Shown here in pieces: positions 1 through 36,419 of a stretch of 44,030 bases of DNA. The position numbers and the translations under genes were made by a program. The stretch comes from Polymyxa betae A26-41. Taxonomy: Eukaryota; Protista; Endomyxa: Phytomyxea. Position 1 is the stretch's first letter; each line of letters starts with the position of its first letter. The notes under the pieces are model-generated. The model was given only the letters and a program-made list of their open reading frames with translations. It did no database searches and was not told the origin of the DNA. The stretch spans positions 1 through 44,030 of the forward strand of contig RBZT01000519.1 in the NCBI GenBank assembly GCA_003693705.1. Direction: 5' to 3'.

Positions 1-1194
1 CTGTTGACTCTGCCGGTACATTTATTCTTCATATAGTTCCACATGTTTTGCAGGATATTGGCCCATTGAAAGGGATTGAATGGAATTTCTGGTCGGAGCG
101 TTTCATGCGACCTTTAAAGTCAATGAACCACGCCACGAGGGGACAATCTGTCAACATCATGAACAATTACTCTGAGCAAGTTGCAATTTCTTGTTTTAGG
201 TTGGTTCAGTAGAATCAAACACGGGACAAATTTGCTCAATTTTCCGCTAGGCTGCAGCACTACGATCGATACACCTCGCAGGAAAACAGATTATGGACGT
301 TTGGGGAAACAAAGATTGGAGGATTACAGCAAGGACATCGACGAACTGCCGACAGAGCCAAAGGTTTTTGATCCGAAAGATTTGCAGCTAGGTTAAGGGC
401 GGGCTAGGTGTTACAACGAATTGCTTTGACAAATTTGATCAGGTCGTTTGCATGAAGACATGTATCTCAGGATCGATGAGTATCGCCGCTGCGTAGTAAC
501 CTTGAATTCCAGCCTTGAGAAACCTTATTCAGACAGAAGACTGGCGACGGAACCAATCCTTTTCATGAGCACCACGAGAAGCTAATTGATCACTTAAGAA
601 GCAATGGTTTCCACGAAATTTTTCTAAACGCGCTACAAGGTAAGGTGGCTTTTCGTTTGAGGTAATTCGAAATCATAATTATGCAATAAAACTTTGGGAT
701 TTACTTCAGATTTATTATGATGTACAGCTGTTGTTGATATAGTTTGTTCAGGCAATATCGCCAGTCTCACCAAAATTATGCACAAAGGGAAGCTTTTTAG
801 GTCAAAAGATTAAGAACGTAAACGAGCTTTAAAGAGTAGTAACCACATGATGCAAATCAAGATAGAATCATCATGTTCTTCTAAGCATTTCACCTGGTTT
901 GCTTCGGTAAACTGGTTCACCATGTTGACCATCAAAGACGACATGGAGCCCTTGGTAATGGTGTTTGTGGATTGGTATAAGTCGCCGGAGAGCCCAAAGG
1001 TCGGCCATGGAACCAATAAGGAGACAGGCTTGCCCGTGATTGAACCCATGTCCAAAGCTGAAAACAATAAATGGTCCAGATGGGTGTTCAGTGACAACAT
1101 CGAGCCAGTCAACATCATGCTCGGCAAGCTCCCTGAAACAAGATACTATTTCGCAATTAGGATGGGACATAGAGAAGAGCTAGGAATAAAATGA
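1..1194 (+). pseudogene. C-terminal remnant of a CMC/EnSpm(CACTA)-like transposase, truncated by the window start
   Basis: With one frameshift, 1-170 reads LLTLPVHL/LHIVPHVLQDIGPLKGIEWNFWSERFMRPLK, resembling the H..H....GP....W.F..ER motif of CMC transposases. ORF 847-1194 (LVMVFVDWY) resembles their C-terminal beta domain. Possible intron near 640-709. Confidence 0.55.
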
Positions 1195-1475
1195 AATTAC
1201 AACTTTGAGTTTATTACAATAAAACGAAGAGCGAGAAAAAAAGAAAATTTTCCATGTAAAAGCAGCAGCAGTACCAAAACAGAATCAGGCCGCCTGAGCT
1301 GCTTCAGGACTAAACAGACGAGCAATAGAGGAACCAGGTCGAGCCAGCCCAGCAGCTTCAGCGCAAAGAGCAACAGCTCGGGCAAGTTCAGCTCAGACAG
1401 CAGCGACCCGAGCAAACTGAACAGCAGCAACGACCAGTGGAAGCAAGCAATAGATTTAGAGAAAGATCAATGCAA

Positions 1476-3904
1476 TAATAAACTGAGAAAGAGAATATTT
1501 TTCAAAAATGGGCAGCATCCACCCTAGCCGATAATAGTTTGAAAGCTTACTTTCGATTCGAATACTATATCGCTACGAAAACGCGAACCGCAACAACCTA
1601 AACACGAGAACAATCAGTAGAAGAAGGAGAAGCTATAGAACAAACGATGAGCAATGTTAGATTGGCCCAGATGGTACTGCAAGCGAAAAGGAGAAATCAT
1701 GGGCCGCATCAGCGACGAGACCCATTAAAATAGAAAGATAAGTTCATTTTTAAAAGCAACCAACTGATTTAAAAGTTGCAGAAAACTTTAAAACCCTAAA
1801 TAAACTGAGAACAGAGAAAATTTCAAAAATGGGCAGCATCCACCCTAGCAGATAAAAAAGCTTAGAGATTACCATTAGTTCGATGCCATTACATCCACGA
1901 AAATTCGGGCCGCCTTGATCTATACACGAGGATCATTAATACAAGGTGGGCGAACTTTAAAATAAACAAACAGCAATGTCAGATGAGCCCAAAAGGCCCT
2001 GCAAGCGAAAGGAGAAATCGAGCGCCCCATCAGTGACGAACCCAGAAAAATAAAAAGACAAAAGCATTTGTAAAAGCAACCAGCAGATTTACAAGTTGAA
2101 TAAAACGTTTTTAAACATTAATAAACTAAGAAAAAGAAAATTTCAAAATTGGGCAGCATCCACCCTACAATATAAAAAAAAATTAGGGAGTACTTTTGAT
2201 TCGACACCATCACCTCCACGAAAACTCGGGACGCCCAGATCTATACACAGGAGTTGTCAGCACAAAGCATACAATATTTAGCATTAACAAACAGCAATGT
2301 TAGATGGGCTCAGAAGGTGCTGCAAGCGAGAAGCAGAAATAGTGCGTCCCATCAGTGACGAAAACCTTCGATAAGGACAGCAAACAACTGATTTAAAAGT
2401 TGAATAAAACGTTTATGAACATTAATAAACAAAGAAGAGAGCAATTTCTAAAATTGGGCAGCATCCACTCTAAAATATACCAAAATTTAGAGACTACTTT
2501 TGATTCGACACCATCACCGCCCCGAAAACACGGCACGCCCCAATCTATACACAAGAATAGTCAGAACAAAGCATACAAACTTTAGCATAAACTAACAGCA
2601 ATGTTAGATGAGCCAAGAAGGCACTGCAAACGACAAAAAGATATCGTGCGTCCCATCAGTGACGAAAACCTTTGAAATAGAAAGACAAAAGCATATGTCA
2701 AAGCAACCTACTAATTTAAAGGTTGCAGAAAGCGTTTATAAACATTAGTAAACTGATCAGAGAGAAATTGTAAAATTTGGCAGCATCCACCCTAAAATAC
2801 AAAAAAAAAGTACCTTTGATTCGATGCCATTACCGCCACGAAAACTCGGGCGCCTCGAACTATACATGGGAACAATCAGCACAAGGTATGCAAACTTTAA
2901 AATAAAAACAGAAATGTTAGATGAGCCCAGAAGGCCCTGCAAGCGAAAAGGAGAAATCGAGCGCCCCACCCCATCAGTGACGAACCCAGTAAAATAGAAA
3001 GACAAAAACATTTGTAAAAGCAATCAGCAGATTTTCATGTAAACATTAATAAACTAAGAAGAATGAAAATTTCAAAATTGGGCAGCATCCACCCTAAAAT
3101 ATATAAAAATATATAGAGAGTACTTTTGATTCGACACCATCACCGCCACGAAAACTCGGGACGCCCAGATCAATACATTAGAGTAGTCAGCGCAAAGTAT
3201 ACAATCTTTAGCATAAACAAACTGCAATGTTAGATGGGCTCAGAAGGCCCTGCAAGCGAAAAGAAGAAATCGTGCGTCCCATCAGTGACGAAAACCTTTG
3301 AAATAGAAAGATAAAAGCATAAGTAAAATCAACCTACTTATTTAAGCGTTGCAGAAAACTCTAAAAACATTAATAAACTGAAAAGAGAGAAAAAATTTCA
3401 ATATTGGGCAGCATCCACCCTAGAAGATAAAAGCATTAACAGAGTACCTTTGATTCGATGCCATCACCGCAACGAAATCTCGGGACGCCCCGAACTATAC
3501 ACGAAAACAATCATCACAGGCATCAAAAATTACAGGTTGAACAAAAAACATTGCTAGTCTGGCCCCCGAAGGCCCTTCTAGCGGAAATGTGAAATCAAAT
3601 GCGTCCACCTGTGACAAGACCGAAGCTAATGAACAGAAAAAGCATTCTCAAACGCAGCCAACTGCTTTATAACTATAGAAAACCTAAACTTATAGAGCAC
3701 TAATAAACTGAGAAGAGAGAAAAATTTCAGTAAGGGTCAGCATCCACCCTAGCCGATAGAGCAAAAACGTACCGATTCGAAGCCAAAATCGCCAGCAAGA
3801 ACCCAGACCGCCACAACCTATACACGAGAACAATCAGTCCAAGACGTATAGTCTCATGAAAGAACAAGCAGCAACGCCAGACAGACCTGAAGGGGCCACT
3901 CAGC
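1476..3904. repeat. Tandem array of 8 diverged ~300-330 bp units, running into the assembly gap
   Basis: Anchor GGCAGCATCCACCCT recurs at ~1510, 1831, 2151, 2456, 2778, 3080, 3406 and 3735 (spacings 321, 320, 305, 322, 302, 326, 329). Other shared blocks: TAAACTG, GATTCGA, CTATACAC, GCAATGTTAGAT, CTGCAAGCGAAA, CATCAGTGACGA. Confidence 0.95.
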
Positions 3905-4064
3905 NNNNNNNNNNNNNNNNNNNNNNNNNNNNNNNNNNNNNNNNNNNNNNNNNNNNNNNNNNNNNNNNNNNNNNNNNNNNNNNNNNNNNNNNNNNNNNNN
4001 NNNNNNNNNNNNNNNNNNNNNNNNNNNNNNNNNNNNNNNNNNNNNNNNNNNNNNNNNNNNNNNN
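3905..4064. other. Assembly gap (160 N)
   Basis: Run of N; contiguity across it is not guaranteed. Confidence 1.
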
Positions 4065-4331
4065 TTAGGAGATGGGATCACTCTACACTCAACGTTCATT
4101 GATAAATCAACCAAAGCCAAGTCAGAACAACATTCAAACTTTATAGTTTTACATCAAATTTTATTTGCAAACCATTGCAATTGCAATTTCGCATTAAAGG
4201 GCAGTTAGAATAGGAAAGGACGCAGATTTTTGCGGATGGTCTCACATTGCTGATCCTGGATCCGGAGCGCACTTTGGCAAAATTGCAGGTTTTTTGCAGG
4301 TCTCGATCCAAAAGGCTGATTTCCGCTGCGT

Positions 4332-4590
4332 TTGGCAGAATGCCGCAGGATAAAGCATGTCAGGGCAGACCTGCGCAGTTCCGGTGTCCTGGACTCTGGT
4401 GCTTCTGCTACTTTCATGGACCGCAACTTTGCTCGACTACACGGCATCGCTGCTGTTCCCCTACCACGCGAGATACCGGTTGAAGTCATTGATGGGCGCC
4501 ACATAGATCCCATTATGTCGGAAACCGTCGATTGCCAGCTGACCATCGATCATCTCACTTGCAACCTTCGTTTCCTCATAGCCTATACGA
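4332..4590 (+). pseudogene. Ty3/Gypsy aspartic protease fragment
   Basis: VLDSGASATFMD...IPVEVIDGR retropepsin motif. Confidence 0.8.
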
Positions 4591-4621
4591 TAAATGGCAG
4601 CGTGCGATTGAACCCGACGCT

Positions 4622-5270
4622 GCGTTAATCTCTTTCGGAGCTCATCAAATGCTCGCTGATGGTACTCATTCCAATGCCATTCAGCCTTTTTACTGCTAAA
4701 GTCCGTGAGCGGAGCAGCTATAGAGGCGAATTCCGGAATCAAAGAGTGGTAGTATCCGTCGAGCCAAAGGAAAGTTTTGAGTTGCTTTTTGTTTTGCGGA
4801 ACAGGATATTGTTCCACCGTTTGAACAAGACGTCGATCGGAACGAATACCGTCCCTGTCAATGTTATGTCCGAGATAAGTCACCTGAGTCTGGAACAAGT
4901 GTGTCTTGTTCGGATTCACCATGAGTTGTTCGCGCAGCCGTGAGAAGTCGCGATCCAAACGCTCCATGTGTTCCTGTTCGTCCTAAAATATATGATAACG
5001 TCGTCCATGTATACTAAACAATCAACATAATTCAGGCCATTCAGAGCATTGTTCATCTACCGACAGTACGCTGCCGGCGCACACTTCAGCCCGAAAGGCA
5101 TTGAGTTCCACTCAAACAGCCCTTCACCGATGACGAAAGCTGTCTTCGGGCGGTCTTCCTCCGCAACGGGAACCTGCCAGTATCCTGACTCCATTTCAAA
5201 GACCGAGAAGAACCTTGCACCCGACATTGCCGCAAGAACGTTATCCACGCGAGGGATAGGGAGCATCCAT
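4622..5270 (-). pseudogene. Ty3/Gypsy reverse transcriptase fragment
   Basis: LPIPRVDNVL...GYWQVPV..EDRPKTAF...MPFGL; YMDD near 5000-5011; YLGH...FASIAAPLT...AFDELRKRLT. Confidence 0.9.
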
Positions 5271-5344
5271 TACTGTCACATGGTTGAGCCGATTGTACGC
5301 CTTCTTCTTAGTCAGAACCACACCCGCCGCCCATTGACTTTTTG

Positions 5345-6985
5345 ATGGTGGTATATGCTGATTTTTCAGTAACTGTTCAACTGTATCCTTTACATATTTC
5401 TCCAGGGTGTAGCTGCGGCTTTTTGGAGAGTTACTCGGGTTATCTCTAGACCTGTTTCTAAGTCTATCGATGTGTATAGTGCTGAGACATCAATTGTAGC
5501 TAAACATGGTCTTTTTTTAAGGCCTTTAATTGACAGTTGCTCCAATTCTTGTATCAACTGTAATCTATCCATTAATACATGTTTGTATTTTTTAATGATA
5601 GGTAATAGCTAGGCATGAAGCCATTTAGCCGCTTTGGTCGTGTACATGAGTGGTTTGGAATTATTGGCCTTACTCCAATCGGAGTTTTGTGTATTTTAGG
5701 CATTAAATAAAATTCCGGTGTTACAATGGTGTTCATTTTCGCATTGTAAAAATATAGGGCTGATTTCCAATGTTTCTTGCATATATTACGCAGTTCCAGA
5801 AGAATTTTATTTTCTGGATTAAATGCCTTTTCTTTTATTGCAAGATAAGTTTCCTCATCTTTCAGATGATCTGTTGCTTTTCCAACATACCATTGCTTGG
5901 GCATTAACGTCATTCCTGCATTTTTATCTGCCATTTTAATGAAGATTTGTCTATTTAATAAACATTCCTGTAAATTTTTATAAACATTTACAGTTTTGGT
6001 GCTATATTTGGAAAATATCGAGTCAGATAATTCCATTGCGGTAGGTTTCATGTTCCAGAAACTATCCCATAATTGTCCAATTGATGTGCTAGAGCAAAAA
6101 CTGTCGAACCCGAAAAAGTCCGAAATAGTATCTACCATTTCATCCGTGATAGTATTTTCCACAAGAAATTCTTGCTGTTTTTTATTGAAAATGATACCAC
6201 TGCCCGAGCCTGTGTTTACTAGGCTGTCTTAGTTTTCTTTGCCGGGCCTTTGCGCGCACTCTGCAACGAATTTATTACCACATTGCAACAGTGCGTACAA
6301 TGTTTTGGGGATATGTATTTTACCAATTATATTAATTGGCCCCACGCTTACCTGATTGTTTTGGGGATTTTTCTTTCCGCCAGGTTTTCCTTTGTGCTGC
6401 GCTTTCTCCTGTTTCTTTTGTTGTTGAGGAGGGTCCACTTTCTGCGTTTGGGCTTGAATGTGGGCTTCCGCGGTAGCTTTTTCGACTATCCAATTTGCGG
6501 TTTCCTCCTGCAGACAAACTTCTATCGTTAACGTACTCGTTTCAGCTGAACCAGCCTTAAAAACTTTCTGCTCATTGATAGCACCCTTGAGTTTTTCAAG
6601 GATGTTTTCATATTTAAGTTCGTCTTCTGCTTTCTGGATGATTTCTCCATTTTTTTCAAGGCTTTTTCCTTGAAAAGACGGTTTACTTGAGCCATTAAAG
6701 ACTTTTTTCGTCCGGTTCCAACATAGCATCAAGTCTTTTTGGAATTTTTTCCAAGAAGAATCCTGCGGTCCAAGTATTTTTGTCCGCAACAGTTTGGCCA
6801 TTTTCAAGGTCAATTTCCATGATAAGGTCCGAAGACCAGGCATGTAATTCTTCGAAGACTTTTTTGAATCCGAAGATTTTTTTTACTGTTGCAATAACTG
6901 CGGGCAATATGCCATTGACAATGAGTACAATGACATTTTTCATTGCCGAAGGTGCACGGCCAATGATTGGGTCAGAAGCCTCCAT
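5345..6985 (-). mobile_element. Penelope-like element: disrupted RT ORF with long N-terminal extension, 3'-truncated
   Basis: LLQCGNKF, IKMADKNAG, YLMPKIHK..IGVRPII and TIDVSALYTSI are typical PLE RT motifs. ORFs 6229-6843 and 5572-6162 are in one frame, separated by a single TAA. No GIY-YIG domain is visible because the element is truncated. Confidence 0.85.
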
Positions 6986-7230
6986 TGATGATTCAGGGTT
7001 TGAGTTGTTGAATTAGCGCGACGACAACCAGAATGAACTGGAAATGACCGTAAATGCTCTTTTATAGGCTATTTAATATTAGGGCCGGCCATATATTGAA
7101 AAAATCGAAATTTTATTTTTTCAAGTTAAGTCGATTACACTTATTCCGGACTACGGCTGACGCCTAGATCCTCCTGAATCGGTGTTGATAAGTGCATTTT
7201 TTTGCCTTATCGCGACATAGCTCATTCCAT

Positions 7231-7909: not shown

Positions 7910-9900
7910 TCAGAATGCGTTCACTGACCTGATACTGCTTGGGGTCGGATTCTCAACAAATCTTGCACATTTGTTCACGGCAGCCGCAATGTCGGGTCTG
8001 CATGTAGTCGCCATGACGTTTAGTCGTCCAATAAGTTCTTGATAAGGGAATTTGGTAGCTGAAACAGGTTCATTTGGCTTCTCGAGTTCATCACTCTTGC
8101 TCATTGGTACTTGCTCTGCAATGCAGTTCTCAATCTTGAATAATTTTAAGGTCGCATCAATGTAGGATTCCAGTGAGAATGAAGTCCTCCCTCTTGTTAC
8201 AATCTTCAGTCCAAGAACATGAGTCGCCATAAATCTTGCATTTGGTACTCGGAGCTCAGGATGTTCTTCACGATTTTCAGTTCTTCAAACTGCTCGCCAA
8301 TATAAGTAGATCATCAACATATAATGCCAAAATAACTAAAGCTTCTCCATTCCGTTGCACTAACAGACACGGATCAACAGAACAGTTGCGGAACTTGAGT
8401 TTGGTCTTAAGAAATCCGGTCACGGTCTTCCACCACTCTATTCCAGCTTGGCGCAATCCGTTTACAGCTCGCAGAAGTTCACAGACTAGTTCTTCACAAC
8501 CTTCGTCATTTCTTCGATAACCTTCAAACTGTTCCATGTATATCTTCTCGCGCAATCTTGCGTTCAGGAACGCGGTTTTTAACATCCATCTGATGAACCT
8601 CACATCCGATCTGCGCTCCAATCCCGAACACCAATCGAAGTCCAGCTGGAGAAACTACAGGTGCAAACGTATCATGGAAGTCGATTCCTTGCTGTTGTGA
8701 ACATCCCTTTGCAACCAATCTGGCCTCGAATGACTTCAACTTTCCATACTCGTTCCTATTATTTGCCTACACCCACTTGCAGCAAACAATATTGACTCCG
8801 ATCGGCCTCTTCACCAGTTTCCATGTTGCATTTTTCTCATGGCTTTTCAGTTCCTCACATTCAGCTCTTTTCCAGCTTTCAGCTTGTAGTGATTTCATAG
8901 CATCATTTCGACTCTTCGGTGCTTCAATCGCCAAATGCACAAACTCCTTATGAAATCAGTGTGACTCTCTTCTCTCTCGGGTTGAGCACCTCTTGCCTTC
9001 ATTATGATCGTCTATCTCCTTGTCCTCACCTCCATCATCATCTTGGATCGGATTCTCTTCTCGAGCGGTCTCGTACTCGTTCTCGTCGATATTTTCGCGT
9101 TGTGCAGCTCCTTTGGGAATGTTCTTGCCCTCCTCATTAGTTTGTTTTGGTGGAAATCGTTGTTTTAGATCACATTCTGGAAAATCTGTCGCCCATTATC
9201 GCCCTCCTGATTGATCTCATAGTCTTGGTCATTCTTCGCTTCGACAAATTTCTCGCCTCATGCCGTGATCAGGCTTCCGTTTTTTTGTCGAATCAGATAT
9301 CCGCTTTGGTTTGCAGCAACTCCAACGAAACGACCCTCTTGGCTTTGAAAATCAAGCTTGTTACGCTCCGCCTTCGGAATGTAGTAAACTGCCTTCGCTC
9401 CTAAATCTTTATCTACTTCATGTCCGGGGACTTGCCGAACCTCACTTCATAAGCTGAAAGAAAATTCAATGTACTGCTAAGGCTTCTATTCCGAACGTAT
9501 GCAGCATATATCACCGCCACAACCCAACATGATTTTGGAAGCCTGGATTGCGCCAGAAGAGATCTCGCTCCTTCAACTATAGTCCGATTGGCACGTTCAG
9601 CAATATAGGGTTCTGTTGTGGATTGCGGGGCTCCGTCCCTGTTTGACGGATTCCGCGGTCTCGGCAAAACTGCTGGAACACCCGACTCAGATATTCGCCA
9701 TCGTTATTCGAATGCAACCGTTTTGGCAATTTCCTCCCGAATTCGGTTTCCAGTAACGCCACAAATTGTTTAAGCCTAGGAAACACTTCAGATATCTGAC
9801 GAATCGGAAATACACTGATATGTCGGCTCTTATCGTCAATAAATGTTACGAAGTATCGCGCGCCTGCAGTCCCTTGAACAGGAAATGGTCCACACACATG
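7910..9900 (-). pseudogene. Ty1/Copia pol remnant (integrase-RT)
   Basis: HVCGPFPV..RYFVTFIDD; DGEY; AERANRTIVEGAR; ARLVAKG.SQ.QGIDF.DTFAPV; HQMDVK; LYVDDLLI; YQELIG.L...RPDIA. Multiple frameshifts. Confidence 0.9.
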
Positions 9901-15090: not shown

Positions 15091-15448
15091 CAATCTATGC
15101 TGACTCGCTGTATATCTAATACATGAAAATTAGCTCGAAGATTCATTTTGTCCTTTGTGTTAGGCTGTACCTTCGGCCATATTTCTTTCGGAATTAACTG
15201 CTTCCCAACCTTTCTTGTTGCAGACCAAGAGTTGTAATGAACGCCATGCGAGAACATTAAAACGCTGATCTTGTAAGAATTTATTGTGTCACGCCCACCA
15301 GTTTTCATCTCATTCGCTGGAGGCGACGTCAACATATCTTCAACAAACTCGGAACCAGAGCTACGATCACTCTTTCTAATAGGCAAAGATAAATAAGCAN
15401 NAATCTATTAATGGAGGAAAGGGACAGGGTAAGCGCGAATATCCCAAT

Positions 15449-16164: not shown

Positions 16165-18932
16165 GGGAAATTTTCTAGACGCGCGCGTCTGGAGAACTGC
16201 GCAGACGCGCGCAAATTTTGCGATTTCGATTTCCAACGATCTGATTGGCTAAAATTGTTTATAGTTAATATCAACAGCTTAATGCAGACAGATGCTGTTT
16301 TAAGAACTTCCTCGATCCTGTATTCGGCTATTATGTGTCTGATTGCTTATAGTAGGGACATTTCGATCCACTTCGATGGCTGCTGATAATAATTCCTCGT
16401 GTCCGACACATTGAGCAGAACCGCCGTTCGAGTTGCAGCTTTTGCGGGTCGGCACAAACTCGATCTGTTTATGCTGCGTTTCTCGCTCCGGGAAGCGGTT
16501 ACGATTCAGAACGATGTGAGCTAAACACAATCAATAACAGAATGAATGAATTATATAAGGAAGTCAGCGTTTTAAATATGCCCCAATTAGGGCCTGCTTC
16601 ATATACCTAGAAACTCCGTGGCGGAGTTTACATGTGCAGTGGCTGCTGCCCAGCCGGCACTGTACTGCCAGTGGAGAGGAAGTGCGTGTCGGAGTTTTCC
16701 ATCTGCACTGGAGGGCTTGATGTCCCCTGACTGTCGGTTAATGTAGGGAGGGATACTAGTCGAGCGGCAGCACGTATCGTAGACTAGACTGGCTTCCTGC
16801 TCAAAAGTGTACAAGAACTTCGTTTGATGGACGTCCTCGTTTAACGGATTTCTTAGACAAAGGCGCACGCATAGGGATGAATGTCAATGAATAGGATTGT
16901 TGTTCCGGTTTCGCCGAACCCATCATAATCAAGGAATTGAATACAGCTGTTTGGCGCTTATATGCAGCCACGCTACTTTGACCTATATCCATCCACAACT
17001 TCCCTTGCTGTTTGCATTAGATGGTGATACATCAGGCTTGGTGTTGGAACAATAATCCGGTTATAGGCATCTTTTTCAACCGAAAGACGTACAGAATCGT
17101 GATTACTTGACAGAATTCGTGTTTCAGTCAAAGGTGATACAGTTAGATCGAGTCGACGTCGTGCCATAGAATACAAATGATGCTCTTTAAGACGCCTGCG
17201 TGTTTTCAGATGCTCGACCGAGGAAAGTTCATGATCAATCATCAACATTTCATGAGCTTGAACAAGATTAATGCTCACATTAAAAGGATCGATATTCAGC
17301 TTCATATAAATCGAACAAATGTGACGGCATGGTATTGGGGAAGATGCGAAATCTGAGCATGAGCACTCCGGTGCAGAATCATTAGTTCCATCTAGCTTAA
17401 TGTTATATTCTGTTGAAGTTGGCGTCCCTTTTGATGACTTGACTTTCAAACATTCAGCGGCTCTTTCACAGATGTACCTATAGGCATGAGGCATGTCAAT
17501 ATATTGCTCATCGACGCAGGGAACTATAGCACCTGGACCTGCGGTGCTTGCCGTATCTTTTGCACAAATTCACTCCAATGCCTGATAACTGATAAAAAGC
17601 TTGGTGATCAGAATTCATGACATCTCTTCTTGCAACTCGACCTCGTCTAAATGCCAGCGAAGCAGCTGATACAAATTGTTCTTTCGCAGCTCGCTTTTTT
17701 TCGATCCACCACCTTTTATTCGGCTGTTCGTACCTTCTCGTCTCTGGGTGGACTTGCAGCCTGCCGGAAACGACCCGCTTGTATACGAGCTGCAAACCTT
17801 AAAGCCGTCGCTATGCAACGCGGTAATGAACTGCTAAGCGGAAGGCGCGTGTCCAAACGTAGCCAAATAGATTGTTAAATGATCGTCTAGTGTTCGGGCA
17901 GAATCTGTTGAAGCCAGACCAAGTTTCGGAATTCGGATTAATTTGAATGAAGAGAGGCTAATGAACCTAAATATCTCACGTGCAATACACGGCCTTTATT
18001 TCAGCTTCAATAGTTATTGTTTATTTAGAGATCTGGTTATATGTTGTAACTGGAACAGGAATTACTTATGGGACCTCTGCACGCTCACTCCGTAGATCAG
18101 TACTTCGGATTAATCAGACTTACCTTTCCAGACTCATCTTGGCCAGTAGGTCCTCGTACTTCAACAGATTCGAACTCCTTATATATGGCGTCAAACATAG
18201 ATCTTTGAAAACTATCGGCCAGGTTTTGAAGTCCAGCTTTTGACGGAAATATGCGGTTATGATAATGGTTGGTGCAGAGCAGATGTTTCATCTTGAAATG
18301 CTCCGCCACAATGTGGTAAGCTGACCCATCATCAGTCATAAATGTGACACCTTCACGACCAAGACTGAAATGATTCAATGCTTCGATAATATGATCAGAT
18401 TGCTCTGAACGACATTGAGAGTATGAGCACATTACAGAATTTGCCTAACGAATCCACAAGAGTGTTGAACATGGCAATCAACCCATACAAGTCAACATTA
18501 TGTGTGCCATCATTAATAGTGAAATCGCCAAACATCAGCGCATTCGCTCTCATAGAAGCTTTCATAGTGAAAACGTCAGCCAGTCGGGCATCAGGTCCCA
18601 TCACAAATTCGAAAATGCCACCATCTTGACGAATCTGGTCACCAATCTTTCGAAATTTTGTCAAGCATTTGGGATCATTGCCGTAACGCTCCTTATAACC
18701 TTTCATAATCAGACGACTGAGGAGAGAACCTTCGTAATCATGTTCAGGATTCTGAAGTCTTAGACCCTGGTTCAAGAAAATAGACCCCGTGGCGCAACTG
18801 ATGCTTCCACCAATCAGATTGCGAGTTGGTCTATTTCCAGATCTATTACGGAATATGATCTCCGTGGGGGTCCTTTTCTGAAATAGACGTCTATTTCAGG
18901 TCAAAATTACGCAATAAAATTGCATTTTTTTA

Positions 18933-20133
18933 ATGGATCCGGCGGTTGCTGCTGCTGTTACTGGGGGTCTGATCGTTTCATTGACGGCCCTAGCGGCTGG
19001 AATGATTGCCGCTTGTTATCCAGATCATCGCGACTGGAGGACCAGGCGCCGCATTCGGCGAAATCCATTTGCTGCTGCTGATCAGCGTCCTGAGTATTTT
19101 GACGGCTGGTTTCGAGACACATTCCGCTGTTCGTGGCGGTCATTCGATGAGATTGTCAATCTGGTGAACATAGAATGGGATTCCTATCACGGGCCAATTC
19201 ACCACAATGCTAAGTTCTTCGTCCGCCAACGGGTTGCTGTTTGCCTACATTTCTTGACAAGATCTAGGTCTGTCGTCGATTCCGCCAAAGTTTTCGGAAT
19301 GGGCAAAGCCTCTGCTTTGCGGTACATCGAAGAGGTTTTGGACATTGTAATTGACCGATTGGGCCCTCGATTCATTTACCTTCCAACATCTCATGAGGAA
19401 TGGCGAGAACTTTCACACGGATTTGAGAGCAATTGCGGCTTTCCCGATGCCCGACTGGCAGTTGACGGGACCTTGATCGAGATTGAGCGTCCGCATGATT
19501 ACGAGGGATGGTATTGCCGGAAAGGATATCCTGCTATTAACGTACAAGGTGCTGTTGATTACCAAGGTCGTTTTCGGAGCTACGCCATGCGGCCTGGCGC
19601 TGAAAACGATAAGGGTGTATTCAACCGCTCTGAGTTTGGGAGAACAATCCATCAGCTGTTGCCTCCTAATAAAGTGATCCTTGCGGACGTTGGTTATCAG
19701 TTGTACACACATTGTTTGACTCCTTATGATATCAACGACGAGATGACGTCAGAGGAACGCAACTACAACTATCTGCATTCATGAACGCGAATCGTTGTGG
19801 AGAACGCTTTTGGAATGCTGAAATATCGTTTCCGACGGTTTAAAGCAGCTCTCAATCAGAAAGGCAACCTTGAGAACGGGTGGCGCCCAGAGCAAAAACA
19901 AAAAACGGCCAGCTCTCAAGCAGCGCGAATTATTCGCGGCTGCCTCATCTTTCATAACGTTTTCATTGCGTTATCCGATGATGTTCCTATTTCGGAGAGA
20001 TGATGATAACGCCGTCCTCCCCGACAGTGATCAACCACAAAGTGATCTATTCGAAGCAGTAGATGGAGAACGAGCCAAGCTGCGGCGTGACATTGTAAAG
20101 GTTTATTTGTCATCAATTAAGAACAGCCATTAG
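18933..20133 (+). pseudogene. Harbinger DDE transposase (HARBI1/DDE_Tnp_4-like) with a premature stop
   Basis: AVDGTLI, YCRKGYPAINVQG, END, LADVGY, NYLHS*TRIVVENAFGMLK.RFR, CLIFHN. TGA at 19782-19784 and a probable frameshift near 19995. Confidence 0.9.
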
Positions 20134-30130: not shown

Positions 30131-32946
30131 TCATACCAGGAATTCATTCAGCTTCTTATTCCAGATATGACCGGCTTGTTTTAAACCGTACAATCCCTTT
30201 TCTAGCTTACTGTAATACCCGGGAAATCTTTGATCTCTGAATCCATAAGGCTGCTCCAAATATATTTCTGTATCAATATTTCCGTTTAGGAACGCTTTAA
30301 TGACATCAGCTTGTCTAAGTTTAAGTCGATGTTGGACTGTTAGAGCAAGAAGTAGGCGTTGCGACTTTGCGTGTGCAACTGGAGAAAAAGTCTCATCAAA
30401 ATCGACCACAACATGCTGTGAAAAACCTCGAACTAAACTTGCTTTGAATTTCTCGGTAGCATTGGGTTTCACTGCGAAGACCCACCGACAACTGATAGGT
30501 TTCCTATCAACCGTTTTTTCCACCAATTTCCAAGTCCGACACTGTTGTAGTTTGTTAAATTCTTCCATAGCAGCTCGTTTCCAATATTGTCCATAATGTG
30601 AGCTCAAAGCCTCTGATAAATTTGGGATTGGTATTGTTGATGCTTGAACACCTTGAAGTGCATTAAAGTCATCAGGAATTGGAACTTCGACATTGCCAGC
30701 TACATAAAATTCGCGGGGTTGCGGAGGCCTATTTGATCGTCTCAATTGTGGAGTGATATTGACAGGTTCATTTGTGCTATTCTGAACCGCTTCCACATAG
30801 TCATTCGAACTGTTTTCATCGCGTGGAATGTCTACATTAAAGAGTTAATTAGCAATGTTTGGTTGTTCGCCAATGTCAGACTGGCTTTTGAGCGAACTCG
30901 ATATAAGAAGGAATCTTCGTCAAAGACTGCATCTCGACTAATGATCGTCCGTCTTTCAGTTGGGTCCCAAAAACGATAAGCTTTCTGCCTGTATGAATAG
31001 CCAATAAAAATAGCTGGAAACGATCTAGGTGAAATTCGAGGATAGTAGCGATTGTGCCGATGAACCCAAGCATTACATCCAAAAACTTTTAAGTGCCACA
31101 GTTTTGGTTGCTTGTTAAACCATTTCTGATATGGAGAGCAGAAATTTAAAGCTGAATGTGGAAACCTATTATAAATATAGACTGAAGTGGCTACAGAATC
31201 AGCCCAAAACTCCGGAGGCAATCCCGCATGTAATCGCATGCATTCCGCCGCTTCCGTGATTGTTCGAATTGGTCGTTCAGCCATTCCTTGCTGTTCGTGA
31301 TCATACGGAACAGAGGTTTGATATATAATTCCCATCTCCGAAAGATATTGTTTTATCTCGTTAGAGATATATTCTCCTCCGTCATCTGTTTGAAGACAAA
31401 TCAGTTCTTCGATAGAGGTAGCAGAGGATCGTATTGATTCGCGAACAAATTGTTTCAGTGCCTTCGCTACATCAGATTTTCTCTCCGACATATTAAACCC
31501 AAATATATCTTGAAAACCCATCAATGAATAAGCAAAAATATCTTGATTTAGAGCTGATCGCCGGGACTGGGAAAGGTCCGCAAATATCAGAGTACACTTT
31601 CTGGAGAGGTTTAGTCGCTATGTTTGTTAAATCTCGTGATGGAAAACTGCCCCTGGTCATTTTTCCCAGTGCACAACCTGAGCAAGGCGATTCGGGAATT
31701 GATATATCCGATACAGAAATGAGCTTCTCATTTATCAACTATTTGATCGATTCATAGTTTCCATGTTTGAGCCGCTCATGACAGCGCGTGATATTTGCTT
31801 TTGTTCGTGCGTTAATATAATTTGCCTGAATGCTGTTATTATCAAGTGATATAGACTATTAACCTTGGGGATTGAGCAGAGTAAGTATCCTTGTGGTTGC
31901 TGTCGAGTATCAGAATAACTGTGACAGAAATCACCATCAAACCAAAATTTTAGGCCTCTAACGCCAATTGAAAATATGTTCTGGCTCATATCCGGAACCA
32001 AAAGAGTATCTTTCAAAATTGCGGATGATTCACCAAACATAACATGACCATTTCCCACATAGGTGCCCATAGTTTCATGATCATCTCCCAATTTGATGCA
32101 TGTATGATTGCCTCGTAAATGGGTCATTTTTGTCCTGTCATTACATATATGGCGGTTACATCCTGAATCTAACAACCAGACATCGTCGTTCATTCCAGAT
32201 ATGGACGAAACAGAATAGGCCGAAATGACTGACTCTTGTTTATCCTTCTTCAATTTTAGTTCAGGATGCAGATTAAAACATGTTGTCCGCCAACATTTGT
32301 TTTCCGGGCAGTTACAAAAACGACAGAAATTTTTCTGTTTAGCAGCTGCCGCAAAGATCGATTGAACTTCTTTATCCTGCGCAGTTCGACGACGTTCAGC
32401 GTTCTGCAATTTTTCGATCACATGTAGACTGCTGAGAGTCTTTGTTGATGCATCAATTGTATCAACAACTGTTTGATATTCCTCCGAGACACCCATCAAC
32501 AATATCAGCGCAAGCAGATTATCGTTAATAGTAATAAAATCGGAGGCAACTCTCGCGACATTATTTGCTGCACCTTGGATTTTCACAACGTATTCAGACA
32601 CCGTAAAACTATCCTGCTTAATAGTAAATACATCTTGGATCGCGTTTAATGCGCCTTGCGTTGAATTGTTGCCAAAACGTGATTCTAAAATATTCCAGGC
32701 TTCCCGTGTGGAAGTTGAATTTTCGACAATGGGATAAATCTCCTCAGACATGCTCAGAAGAAGTATAGCATGAATTCTCTCATCCATATTAGTATCGATT
32801 TCGTCTTCAGTACCAAGGACGGATGTTGCACCGGTCGCCTTAAGGCCCAGTAAAAGCTTGCGACTCCATTGGTGATAATTATCGTTCGACAAAATAGGAA
32901 CAATTTCTTGAAGCTTTCCGATAGGCTCTGACTTCTTAGACGACAT
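30131..32946 (-). mobile_element. Ty1/Copia element: gag-protease-integrase-RT with few disablements
   Basis: 403-aa gag/protease ORF (NYHQW, WLLDSGCNRH); CALGKM..YSDICGP; TDDGGEY, AERPIRT, FWADSV; WVFAVK, ADVIKAFLNG, LYGLKQAG. Confidence 0.95.
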
Positions 32947-34892: not shown

Positions 34893-36050
34893 TTGGTTGG
34901 AAGATTACCTAACAAAAGATACGTCCACTTATCGAGAAATCCCTTTTATCATGGTGTCGGGGCTCAAGCTGGATTTGAAGATGAAACCTCCCAAGGCCCG
35001 AATCATCGACCTGGTCAGACAGAGGAGAAGCTGATTGCCCTTCACAACTGGCAGCTGCTCCTCTATGGTTCCAGTAAAGGAACCAAAAACTATATCGACA
35101 TCTTGGTGCAAACCCTGGAGCCGAAGGCCTTTAGAGAGGAGATGTTGTCATACGTCCATTTTCCCCCAGCTGGTTGTGCTGATCATGCTGTGTTTATTGA
35201 CGAAATGTTACAGGTGGAGAATTTTGAACATTACCTTCGTGACATGGATCGTCCTAAACCGGTTCGTGGCCCTCACGGGTCCAAACGGCTTTATCCTGGT
35301 GCTGGCCCACCGAGTGGCCAATCGGAGGTTAAAAAACCTCGTAACATCATTACAGGCTGAAAGTGTCATGTATCTGGCCATCATATGAAGGTCTGTCCTC
35401 AGCGACCTTCCCCAATGGAGCAGAAAAAGCTTCTTGAACAATATAAGTTGGAAAAACAAGCGAAGAATAAATTCAATATCCGTTCACACTATACTAAACT
35501 TGCTAGAATCGTAGATAGCTCTTTTAATGAGACTGATACTGTAGTAGCAATATTAGCTGAAGAGAAACTCAGCTGTCGAGCTGTATTCGACAGTGGCACA
35601 GATGCCACCATAATATCGGGCAAGCTATGTGATCGACTTCGATGCTTAATGCCACAATTTATAATAATTCCACTTAGGAATCGAGTCACTCTCGAAATGC
35701 CAAATGGTCACTCTACCTCTATTGGAAGTGCCACAAAAATTGATATTATATTAGAAACTAAAATGGGTCAATTATTTGTGCCAAACCAGCAATGTCTGAA
35801 ATGGCAGGATATGAATGAGGATCTTCTACTTGGAAATGACATGCTAATGTCAATAGGAATCAATCCTCAAAATGCATTAGACTCTTCACTAGCGTCTTCT
35901 ATACAAAAAAGTGATAATACACAAACTGATTCAGAGTATACTGTGTCTGTGTCACCGGATATAGGCCAGGATCTACAATCCGAACTTTATTCTTACTTTA
36001 AAGATAAAATAAAGGAAGCACGTACCATGGGTATGAGCCTCAAACTGGAC
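34893..36050 (+). pseudogene. Gypsy gag-protease remnant
   Basis: Knuckle CHVSGHHMKVC (~35368); AVFDSGTDATII and DLLLGND protease motifs. Confidence 0.8.
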
Positions 36051-36080
36051 AACCCTTCGAACCACAACTTCGGCGCAACC

Positions 36081-36419
36081 TGTCGTAATTCTCTGGAGCT
36101 CCTGTGTTCTTGACCTTTCGGGTTTGAGATTGAGGGAGGGTGTTAGTAAGCGATCCAATCTCCTGTGTACAGGTGTTGAGACAGAGTCCAATTCTGCTGG
36201 CGCACTTCATACTCCAGCGGCTGGCAGCGTCGTCTCCGCAGCTCATCTCGAGGCAGGGAGGGCGTAACCCTCTGATGCCAACGGTGCCAACATTTGAGGA
36301 CGGAGAAGTCCGTGGCGGAGTTTTGGTTTATATGGTATTGCCCTAATTCTCTATTGTGATATATAATGCCTCCAGGCCATAATACAATTCATTCTGTTAT
36401 AGACTCTGTTTAGCTCACA
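36081..36419 (+). repeat. LTR-like repeat family B, copy 1 (TG...CA ends, TATA-like motif)
   Basis: Inverted homologue at ~38790-39040 and a partial copy at ~39235-39325. Shared translation SDPISCVQ..QRLAASS.QLISRQGG.NPLMPTVPT in the ORF track. No TSD found. Confidence 0.7.

What the first reader, a model, noticed from the sequence alone, without database searches (positions are those of the whole stretch)
1476..3904. Tandem array of 8 units that look like a structured minus-strand RNA
Seen, minus strand, by-eye alignment. (i) Long-range stem GGGACGC/GCGTCCC in units 3 and 6; unit 5 has GGGCGC-TCGA/TCGA-G-GCGCCC; unit 1 has GCGGCC/GGTTCGC, a G-C to C-G swap. (ii) Basal stem GGGTTCG/CGAGTTT (unit 5), GGGTTCG/CGAATTT (unit 2), GTCTTG/CGAGAT (unit 7). 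(iii) Hairpin CCCTA/TAGGG (unit 3), CTCTA/TAGAG (unit 4), CTCTA/TAGGG (units 2, 6): a C-G/U-A/U-G series that pairs only on the minus strand. (iv) Enclosing stem GGCGGT/GCTGCC. Unit lengths are not multiples of 3 and the frames read contain stops. I do not recognise it as tRNA, 5S, snRNA, SRP or a known ribozyme. Inference: a multicopy ncRNA cassette, convergent with and directly downstream of a CMC-like transposase, possibly a transposon-borne RNA array. Caveat: the minus strand is G/T-rich, which inflates chance G-U pairs, and units 2 and 4 have mismatches in stem (i).
Basis: partly seen in the sequence, partly recalled or inferred. Interest (0 to 1): 0.85.

Follow-up and report, generated by a model that had tools for sequence, protein, structure and literature searches.

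The report
Transposon-borne repeat array spliced into RNA
The eight ~320-bp repeats are real. They are not a folded RNA gene but a repeat array carried inside a CACTA-like DNA transposon, and each repeat holds one 47-base exon that appears to be spliced into an antisense, probably non-coding transcript.

Summary
The array is real: 7 full and 2 partial units of 302-329 bp at about 1438-3893.

The structured-RNA reading fails every test. There is no Rfam match. RNAalifold finds 0 consensus pairs on either strand. Single units fold no better than shuffles (z -0.02 to -1.4).

The array lies in the 3' part of an ~8.2-kb TIR transposon. The termini read CACCGGAACTGCGCAG and the transposase gives sub-threshold Transposase_21 hits. 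The array recurs at 14 or more places in the genome, in long copies and in ~2.8-kb TIR-array-TIR derivatives. Units keep their order between copies (87-98% identity) but are only ~75% alike within an array.

The new point comes from public contigs of two studies. They join one 46-47-nt segment per unit, and every joint is bounded by GT..AG on the minus strand. This chain joins to a terminal exon at 1597 to ~1232. The exon-exon junction is absent from the genomic DNA held.

So the minus-strand transcript is probably real, but it is a spliced chain of mini-exons antisense to the transposase. It has no consistent ORF and no conserved fold. Its function is unproven.

Another first-stage note on other DNA of this genome reached the same exon-intron reading.

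The parts
1..1194 (+). 3' part of the CACTA/CMC-like transposase region. The contig starts inside the element, and the ORFs are fragmented.
   Evidence: Collinear at ~91% with L032:4003-5190. Upstream ORFs of sister copies give sub-threshold Transposase_21 hits: E 0.036 and 6e-4. A 70%-identical database protein, P0002, gives E 1.7e-5.
1232..1597 (-). Terminal exon of the spliced minus-strand transcript. It starts at the exon of the last unit, whose donor is not used. AATAAA lies on the minus strand at 1215-1210.
   Evidence: X10 contig 9 and X13 contig 13 cover 1232/1257-1595/1597 and are joined to upstream exons. Acceptor GTGTTTAG|G lies at 1599-1598.
1438..3893 (-). Tandem array: 7 full units (302-329 bp) plus partial units at both edges.
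1873..1919 (-). 47-nt mini-exon of unit 6 (TATAG|...|GTAATC).
   Evidence: Predicted by alignment; not seen in the contigs laid.
2194..2240 (-). 47-nt mini-exon (TATAG|ATCTGGG...AATCAAAA|GTAC).
   Evidence: Pieces 2192-2240 in X10 and X13, with joints 1595>2192 and 2240>3124, ends CT..AC on +. Coordinates.
2498..2544 (-). 47-nt mini-exon.
   Evidence: Joint 2544>2814, CT..AC, in X13. Coordinates.
2814..2859 (-). 46-nt mini-exon.
   Evidence: X13 contig 18 piece 2814-2859, flanked by joints 2544>2814 and 2859>3124. Coordinates.
3124..3170 (-). 47-nt mini-exon. In this copy the acceptor reads TTG, not TAG.
   Evidence: Pieces 3124-3170 in X10. Coordinates.
3448..3494 (-). 47-nt mini-exon.
   Evidence: X13 contig 19 piece 3448-3495. 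Coordinates.
3773..3817 (-). 45-nt exon-equivalent of the first, partial unit.
   Evidence: The X10 piece 3769-3819 belongs to an unspliced contig of a diverged subfamily.
4065..4386 (-). 3' terminal region of the transposon, ending in the TIR. Read inward on the minus strand it begins CACCGGAACTGCGCAGGTCTGC. It is the presumed site of the antisense promoter or first exon; that is inference.
   Evidence: Conserved in 5 copies up to 4386/4387, where similarity stops. There are 39 TIR matches in the genome against 4 in the control.

Best explanation
The array is an old internal tandem repeat. It sits between the transposase and the 3' TIR of an ~8.2-kb CACTA/CMC-like DNA transposon and is copied along with the element.

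Each unit carries, on the minus strand, a branch-point-like CTGAY, a pyrimidine run and AG acceptor, a 47-nt exon, and a GTA donor. Transcription antisense to the transposase, presumably starting near the 3' TIR (inferred), gives a pre-RNA. Its ~255-280-nt introns are removed. That leaves a chain of 47-nt exons joined to a ~365-nt terminal exon, which ends beside the transposase stop.

The RNA has no consistent reading frame and no conserved fold. It is most likely a non-coding antisense transcript. On the + strand every unit also carries AATAAA, so transposase mRNA probably ends inside the array and overlaps the antisense RNA. An antisense or dsRNA effect on the transposon is therefore the most likely function, if there is one (my estimate ~30%). 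Otherwise the splicing is a by-product of repeated splice signals.

Shown here: the array, its place in the transposon, the GT..AG joints, and the absence of structure and of an ORF. Inferred: the RNA nature of the two runs, the promoter, and any function.
For: - **Place in a transposon.** Window 1-3904 and 4065-4387 are collinear at 91-94% with C177. The full copy L032 has 22-nt TIRs at 172-193 and 8391-8412, which makes it 8241 bp. The genome holds 39 TIR matches against 4 in the control. Transposase_21 hits are sub-threshold. Short TIR-array-TIR copies exist, for example L015:5983-8751.
- **Copy number.** 54 full units lie in 14 arrays.
- **Positional orthology.** Units match between copies at 87-98%, against 75% within an array.
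- **Splicing.** X10 and X13 come from two studies. Their joints 1595>2192, 2240>3124, 2544>2814 and 2859>3124 all end CT..AC on +, with 0-2 ambiguous letters. The pieces coincide with the predicted exons. The spliced contig has depth 18.8, against 4-5 for intronic contigs. None of the joints listed for DNA run X1 is CT..AC.
- **Junction not in DNA.** The exon-exon junction is absent from the 27 Mb of genome held.
- **Splice signals.** AG in 42/54 units, GT in 49/54, exon of 47 nt in 41/54; indels are 2.8 times rarer in the exon. A contig of a subfamily whose donor is mutated to CT is unspliced.
- **No structure.**
- **No ORF.**
- **Precedent.** CACTA elements with a satDNA array close to the 3' end are described in PMC8978399.
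Against: - The library type of X10 and X13 is not on record ('?'). They are contigs, so RNA origin, strand, ends and level are inferred from the splice dinucleotides, contig sizes and depths.
- The runs carry other organism labels than the window's source.
- Exon and splice-site columns are not clearly better conserved than the rest of the unit: exon 0.80 against intron 0.79, and splice columns at the 68th-96th percentile. Selection for the RNA is therefore not shown.
- The most conserved block, GTGGATGCTGCC (0.96), is intronic and unexplained.
- The first exon and promoter were not found.
- The TSD is unresolved: TTT/TTT in one copy, ATGCA/ATGCC in another.
- The transposase match stays below Pfam's cut-off.
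Confidence: 0.68

Rival explanations
1. A plain transposon-borne satellite. The array has no RNA-level role. The joints in X10 and X13 are DNA variants, retrocopies or assembly artefacts of a repeat, not splicing.
For: The runs are contigs of unknown library type. Repeats create false joints, and X1 shows many. Exon and intron are equally conserved. CACTA elements with satellite arrays near the 3' end are known.
Against: Four joints in two studies all end CT..AC, with at most 2 ambiguous letters, at exactly the same position in each unit; the chance per joint is ~1/256. No X1 joint does. The junction is absent from the genome held. The spliced contig is about 4 times deeper than the intronic ones.
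Confidence: 0.15
2. One reading: each unit is a structured non-coding RNA held together by stems (i)-(iv), a multicopy ncRNA cassette.
For: The stems are complementary in the consensus: 81.5% of cells pair, against 37-50% when slid. G-U pairs favour the minus strand, which is also the strand that is spliced.
Against: No Rfam match, even at E up to 10. RNAalifold gives 0 pairs and energy 0 on 54 units, on 37 re-phased units on both strands, and on the exons alone. Covariation equals the shuffled value. z-scores are -0.22 and -0.02 on the minus strand, -1.38 and -0.29 on the plus strand. Splicing separates the two arms of stems (i), (ii) and (iv) into intron and exon.
Confidence: 0.04
3. A function at the DNA level. 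The array is a cis element of the transposon: subterminal repeats that bind transposase or another protein at the invariant GTGGATGCTGCC block, or a stack of poly(A) signals for the transposase mRNA. The RNA would be incidental.
For: GTGGATGCTGCC is the most conserved 12-mer (0.96), occurs once per unit, and is intronic. The array is kept in short non-autonomous copies. AATAAA on the + strand occurs in 7 of 8 units, inside a conserved block. CACTA elements are defined partly by subterminal repeats (PMC8978399).
Against: The motif is absent from the left subterminal region and from the rest of the element, unlike the binding motifs of En/Spm-type elements, which occur at both ends. A unit of 320 bp is far longer than typical binding repeats. 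No binding data exist.
Confidence: 0.15
4. A protein-coding gene of mini-exons: a second transposon gene on the opposite strand that encodes a repeat protein.
For: Joined exons give long stop-free stretches in some copies: 99 of 109 codons in L032 and 71 in the window. Frame offset 2 is open in 50/54 exons.
Against: A 47-nt exon shifts the frame at each junction. Frame offset 1 is open in only 13/54 exons, so no frame stays open in most arrays. Exon lengths of 44-48 nt vary without regard to the frame. The sequence is poor in A, which alone gives few stops. The terminal-exon ORF differs between copies.
Confidence: 0.04
5. A spliced-leader-RNA-like gene array. Each unit would be a leader exon plus an intron with an Sm-like site (AAUUUUGA lies about 50 nt past the donor).
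For: A mini-exon followed by GU, a hairpin-like segment and then AAUUUUGA; tandem units of ~320 bp resemble SL gene repeats (comparison from general knowledge).
Against: Exons have a used upstream acceptor and are joined to each other. Exon sequence is only 80% conserved and varies in length. No Rfam SL family matches. Exon depth in the runs is ordinary, not that of a leader. The array sits inside a transposon.
Confidence: 0.02

Closest known systems
CACTA (En/Spm, CMC superfamily) transposons with an internal satellite array near the 3' end, such as the Jozin elements of Chenopodium (PMC8978399)
   Same: A TIR element beginning CAC, a Transposase_21-type transposase, and a tandem array downstream of the transposase close to the 3' end, carried in dispersed copies.
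   Different: Here the unit is ~320 bp with diverged, positionally ordered units. Each unit has splice signals that appear to be used on the antisense strand. The transposase match is sub-threshold and the TSD is unresolved.
Natural antisense or convergent transcripts of transposons
   Same: A transcript antisense to the transposase, ending beside or overlapping its 3' end, that could form dsRNA with it.
   Different: The transcript is assembled from one mini-exon per tandem repeat. No small-RNA or regulatory evidence exists here.
Spliced-leader RNA gene arrays
   Same: Tandem ~0.3-kb units, each with a mini-exon, a GU donor and a downstream AAUUUUGA.
   Different: The exons have functional acceptors, are variable, are cis-joined, and are not seen at leader-like depth. 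It is not a member.
Structured ncRNA families of Rfam
   Same: None beyond local complementarity.
   Different: No match, no consensus structure, no covariation.

Membership tests
CACTA/CMC DNA transposon | Terminal inverted repeats that begin CAC(TA/YR) | tested here: met
   22-nt TIRs CACCGGAACTGCGCAGACCTGC at L032:172-193 and 8391-8412, 91% complementary. The window end lies at 4371-4386.
CACTA/CMC DNA transposon | Transposase of the Transposase_21 (tnp2) type | tested here: inconclusive
   Best hits E 6e-4 (19.5 bits) and, for homolog P0002, E 1.7e-5 (24.6 bits). Both fall below the 28.6-bit cut-off.
CACTA/CMC DNA transposon | Target-site duplication of 2-4 bp (3 bp in CACTA) | tested here: inconclusive
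   L032 has TTT on both sides. L015 has ATGCA against ATGCC and no 3-bp match. No more copies could be fetched.
CACTA/CMC DNA transposon | Subterminal repeats at both ends that carry the same short motif | tested here: not met
   The array and its invariant block occur only at the 3' side.
Transposon-borne satellite array | Tandem array inside the TIRs, present in several dispersed copies | tested here: met
Structured ncRNA | Match to a curated RNA family | tested here: not met
   No match at gathering score. Only chance-level hits at E up to 10.
Structured ncRNA | Conserved secondary structure with compensatory changes | tested here: not met
   RNAalifold finds 0 pairs. The named stems show no excess covariation.
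Structured ncRNA | Folding energy below that of shuffled sequence | tested here: not met
   z -0.22 and -0.02 on the minus strand; -1.38 and -0.29 on the plus strand.
Spliced (cis) RNA gene | Exon junctions with GT..AG in transcripts, absent from DNA | tested here: inconclusive
   Four CT..AC joints in X10 and X13 and no such junction in the genome held. However, the library type of the runs is not on record.
Spliced-leader RNA genes | Leader exon at the 5' end of the RNA, invariant, and found on many mRNAs | tested here: not met
   The exons have used acceptors, 80% identity and ordinary depth. Attachment to other mRNAs is not testable here.
Protein-coding repeat gene | An open frame kept across the joined exons | tested here: not met
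   47-nt exons; frame offset 1 is open in 13/54.

The most novel reading that the evidence does not exclude
The array is a selected gene of the transposon: an antisense long non-coding RNA built from tandem 47-nt mini-exons. Its convergent overlap with the transposase mRNA, or its repeated exon or intron motifs such as GUGGAUGCUGCC, would tune transposition or feed the host's small-RNA silencing. It would be a modular, copy-number-variable regulator kept even in non-autonomous copies.
Probability: 0.2. Interest if true: 0.7.

Novelty: new variant of a known kind. Interest (0 to 1): 0.45.

Why it matters
CACTA-type transposons that carry satellite arrays are known. An array whose every unit works as an exon-intron module, so that antisense transcripts are spliced into a chain of mini-exons, is not something I found described. 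This rests on my own knowledge and two literature searches.

If confirmed with stranded RNA data, three things would follow:
- It would be a clear case of how tandem duplication multiplies splice signals inside a mobile element.
- It would be a candidate self-regulatory or silencing-trigger RNA.
- Short non-autonomous copies that insert in genes would be a ready source of donor and acceptor sites.

It is also a caution: complementary blocks in a G/T-rich repeat look like stems by eye but carry no covariation.

Tried and rejected
- **Rfam.** Searched at gathering score and at E up to 10: nothing.
- **RNAalifold.** Run on two phasings, both strands and the exons alone: no pairs.
- **Per-unit z-scores.** A script over all units timed out. 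Four strand-folding runs replaced it.
- **Pfam on window ORFs 1-7000.** Only noise, plus weak RVT hits outside the element.
- **PF02992 over the whole genome.** Only weak hits.
- **phmmer of a 164-aa transposase ORF against 1.8 billion proteins.** Four close relatives and no distant ones.
- **Invariant block at the left end.** Absent.
- **A 14-nt inverted match** of the exon end at L032:1176-1189: chance level by my estimate.
- **Matching loose contig ends to the loci held.** This only showed that some contigs come from diverged subfamilies.
- **Bacterial promoter and terminator scan.** Irrelevant for a eukaryote.
- **Second literature search,** for tandemly repeated exons in transposons: nothing relevant.
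- **Joined exons.** I examined them only inside scripts, for ORFs and folding.
- **SL-RNA and coding readings.** Considered and rejected; see the rival explanations.

Full report
**1. The observation**

The region holds a genuine tandem array. TRF reports periods 304 and 313, 5.9 copies at 75% matches. The motif GTGGATGCTG recurs on the minus strand at 3747, 3418, 3092, 2790, 2468, 2163, 1843 and 1522. A profile built from the units finds seven full units and two partial ones, 1438-1522 and 3749-3893.

The array ends just before an assembly gap (N 3905-4064). A homologous copy shows that the gap hides about 193 bp of non-array sequence, not more units. No long ORF crosses the units.

**2. The structured-RNA reading**

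- Rfam gives nothing at gathering score, and only chance-level hits at E up to 10.
- I collected 54 full units from 14 arrays of the same genome. RNAalifold predicts no consensus pair for them.
- In that test 81.5% of cells pair. The shuffled mean is also 81.5%, and 301 of 500 shuffles are at least as high. Four pairs change on both sides, against 5.6 expected. The covariation score is 0.127 against 0.130.
- The excess over slid partners (37-50%) is what one expects for a structure read off these same sequences.
- RNAalifold on A3 gives 0 pairs on both strands, and also on the exons alone.
- Single units fold no better than dinucleotide shuffles: z -0.22 and -0.02 on the minus strand, -1.38 and -0.29 on the plus strand.

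The structured-ncRNA interpretation is not supported.

**3. Where the array sits**

Window 1-3904 and 4065-4387 are collinear at 91-94% identity with contig C177. Five copies share the sequence up to window 4386/4387, where similarity stops. That end is a terminal inverted repeat. In the complete copy L032 the TIRs lie at 172-193 and 8391-8412 (CACCGGAACTGCGCAGACCTGC, 22 nt, 91% complementary), which gives an 8241-bp element. The 17-mer terminus occurs 39 times in the 27 Mb held, against 4 for the control.

On the plus strand the element carries fragmented ORFs. One gives a sub-threshold Transposase_21 (tnp2) hit, E 0.036 in L032 and 6e-4 in L014. A 70%-identical database protein gives E 1.7e-5 over profile positions 37-185. 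'CACTA/CMC-like' is therefore reasonable but not proven.

The target duplication is unresolved: TTT/TTT in L032, ATGCA/ATGCC in L015.

The array lies between the transposase and the 3' TIR, about 480 bp from that end. Short derivatives of ~2.8 kb consist of TIR, array and TIR, for example L015:5983-8751. CACTA elements with a satellite array close to the 3' end have been described in Chenopodium (PMC8978399).

**4. History of the array**

Units within the window are on average 75% identical (65-86%). Each matches the unit at the same rank in C177 at 87-97%, and in C732 and C452 at 92-98%. Some copies have lost units. The array is therefore older than the spread of this subfamily and travels as a block. 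It is not a rapidly homogenised satellite.

**5. The new finding: splicing**

I laid contigs of four public runs on window 1-3904. In X10 and X13 (two studies, library type not on record) contigs skip from 1595 to 2192, 2240 to 3124, 2544 to 2814 and 2859 to 3124.

- All four joints end CT..AC on the plus strand, which is GT..AG on the minus strand, with 0-2 ambiguous letters.
- The retained pieces (2192-2240, 2814-2859, 3124-3170, 3448-3495) are one 46-47-nt segment per unit.
- They coincide with TATAG|exon|GTA as read from the alignment.
- The chain ends in a longer piece, 1597 to 1232, next to an AATAAA on the minus strand at 1215-1210.
- The spliced contig is deeper (18.8) than the contigs covering intron sequence (4-5).
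- In DNA run X1 none of the joints listed has CT..AC ends.
- A degenerate search for the exon-exon junction finds nothing in the genome held.
- A contig from a subfamily whose donor reads CT is unspliced.

I conclude, with about 80% confidence, that the minus strand is transcribed and spliced. The strand call rests only on the splice dinucleotides. The RNA nature of the runs rests on contig sizes and depths.

**6. Properties of the modules**

Over the 54 units the acceptor is AG in 42 and the donor GT in 49. The exon is 47 nt in 41 units (range 44-48). Indels are 2.8 times rarer in the exon than in the intron. A CTGAY branch-like motif and a pyrimidine run precede the AG.

The exon is not better conserved than the intron (0.80 against 0.79), and the splice columns rank only at the 68th-96th percentile. 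The most conserved 12-mer, GTGGATGCTGCC (0.96), is intronic. It occurs once per unit and nowhere else in the element. It remains unexplained.

A 47-nt exon shifts the frame at each junction, and frame offset 1 is open in only 13 of 54 exons, so there is no consistent ORF. On the plus strand AATAAA occurs once in 7 of 8 units, within a conserved block. The transposase mRNA therefore probably ends inside the array and overlaps the antisense transcript. That is inference.

**7. Interpretation**

The best-supported account is a transposon-borne array of exon-intron modules that gives a spliced, non-coding antisense RNA. Function is unproven. An antisense or dsRNA effect on the element is my preferred guess (~30%). 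Otherwise the splicing is a by-product of duplicated splice signals.

Other first-stage notes on this genome describe CACCG-ended CACTA elements, ~310-bp arrays behind the transposase, and once 'exon-intron modules antisense to a CACTA-like transposase'. I treated these as leads only. My evidence is independent of them.

**8. Limits**

- The genome held is 27 Mb in 1001 contigs and may be partial.
- Joined exons were analysed only in scripts and were not sent to search tools.

Noticed in passing
L015:5983-8751 (also L020 and L027): Short (~2.8 kb) non-autonomous derivatives consist of the 3'-type TIR, the array and the 5'-type TIR, with no transposase. In these copies the exon strand points out towards the far TIR, so transcripts could run into flanking host DNA.
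   Followed up: partly
window 1255-1500: A low-complexity stretch between the transposase stop and the array is open on both strands: Ser-rich (AGC) on +, Leu-rich on - (ORF 1197-1430 -, 77 aa). It lies inside the terminal exon of the antisense RNA. The minus-strand ORF differs between copies (147 aa in L032).
   Followed up: partly
window 1477, 1799, 2120, 2424, 3048, 3372, 3702 (+ strand): AATAAA occurs once per unit on the plus strand, inside the conserved block CATTAATAAACTG. These may be stacked poly(A) signals for the transposase mRNA.
   Followed up: no
window 1511-3748, once per unit (minus strand): The invariant 12-mer GTGGATGCTGCC (96% identity over 37 units) lies about 37 nt downstream of each donor and is followed by AATTTTGA. 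It is found only in the arrays, and its role is unexplained.
   Followed up: partly
window 16973-17491, 18933-19781, 30131-32943, 35385-36110: The rest of the window is dense in other mobile elements: a SWIM zinc finger (MULE-like), a DDE_Tnp_4 (Harbinger-like) transposase, Copia gag/RT/SH3 pieces, and a gag-aspartyl protease. I saw no host gene among the ORFs of 170 aa or more.
   Followed up: partly
window 3905-4064 and 15400-15401: Assembly gaps. The first (160 N) replaces about 193 bp present in the sister copy L032:7899-8091.
   Followed up: yes
L027:43-2088: A diverged copy (65-75% identity) of the same transposase region lies upstream of a short TIR-array element on contig C778, which suggests nesting or tandem arrangement of related elements.
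   Followed up: no
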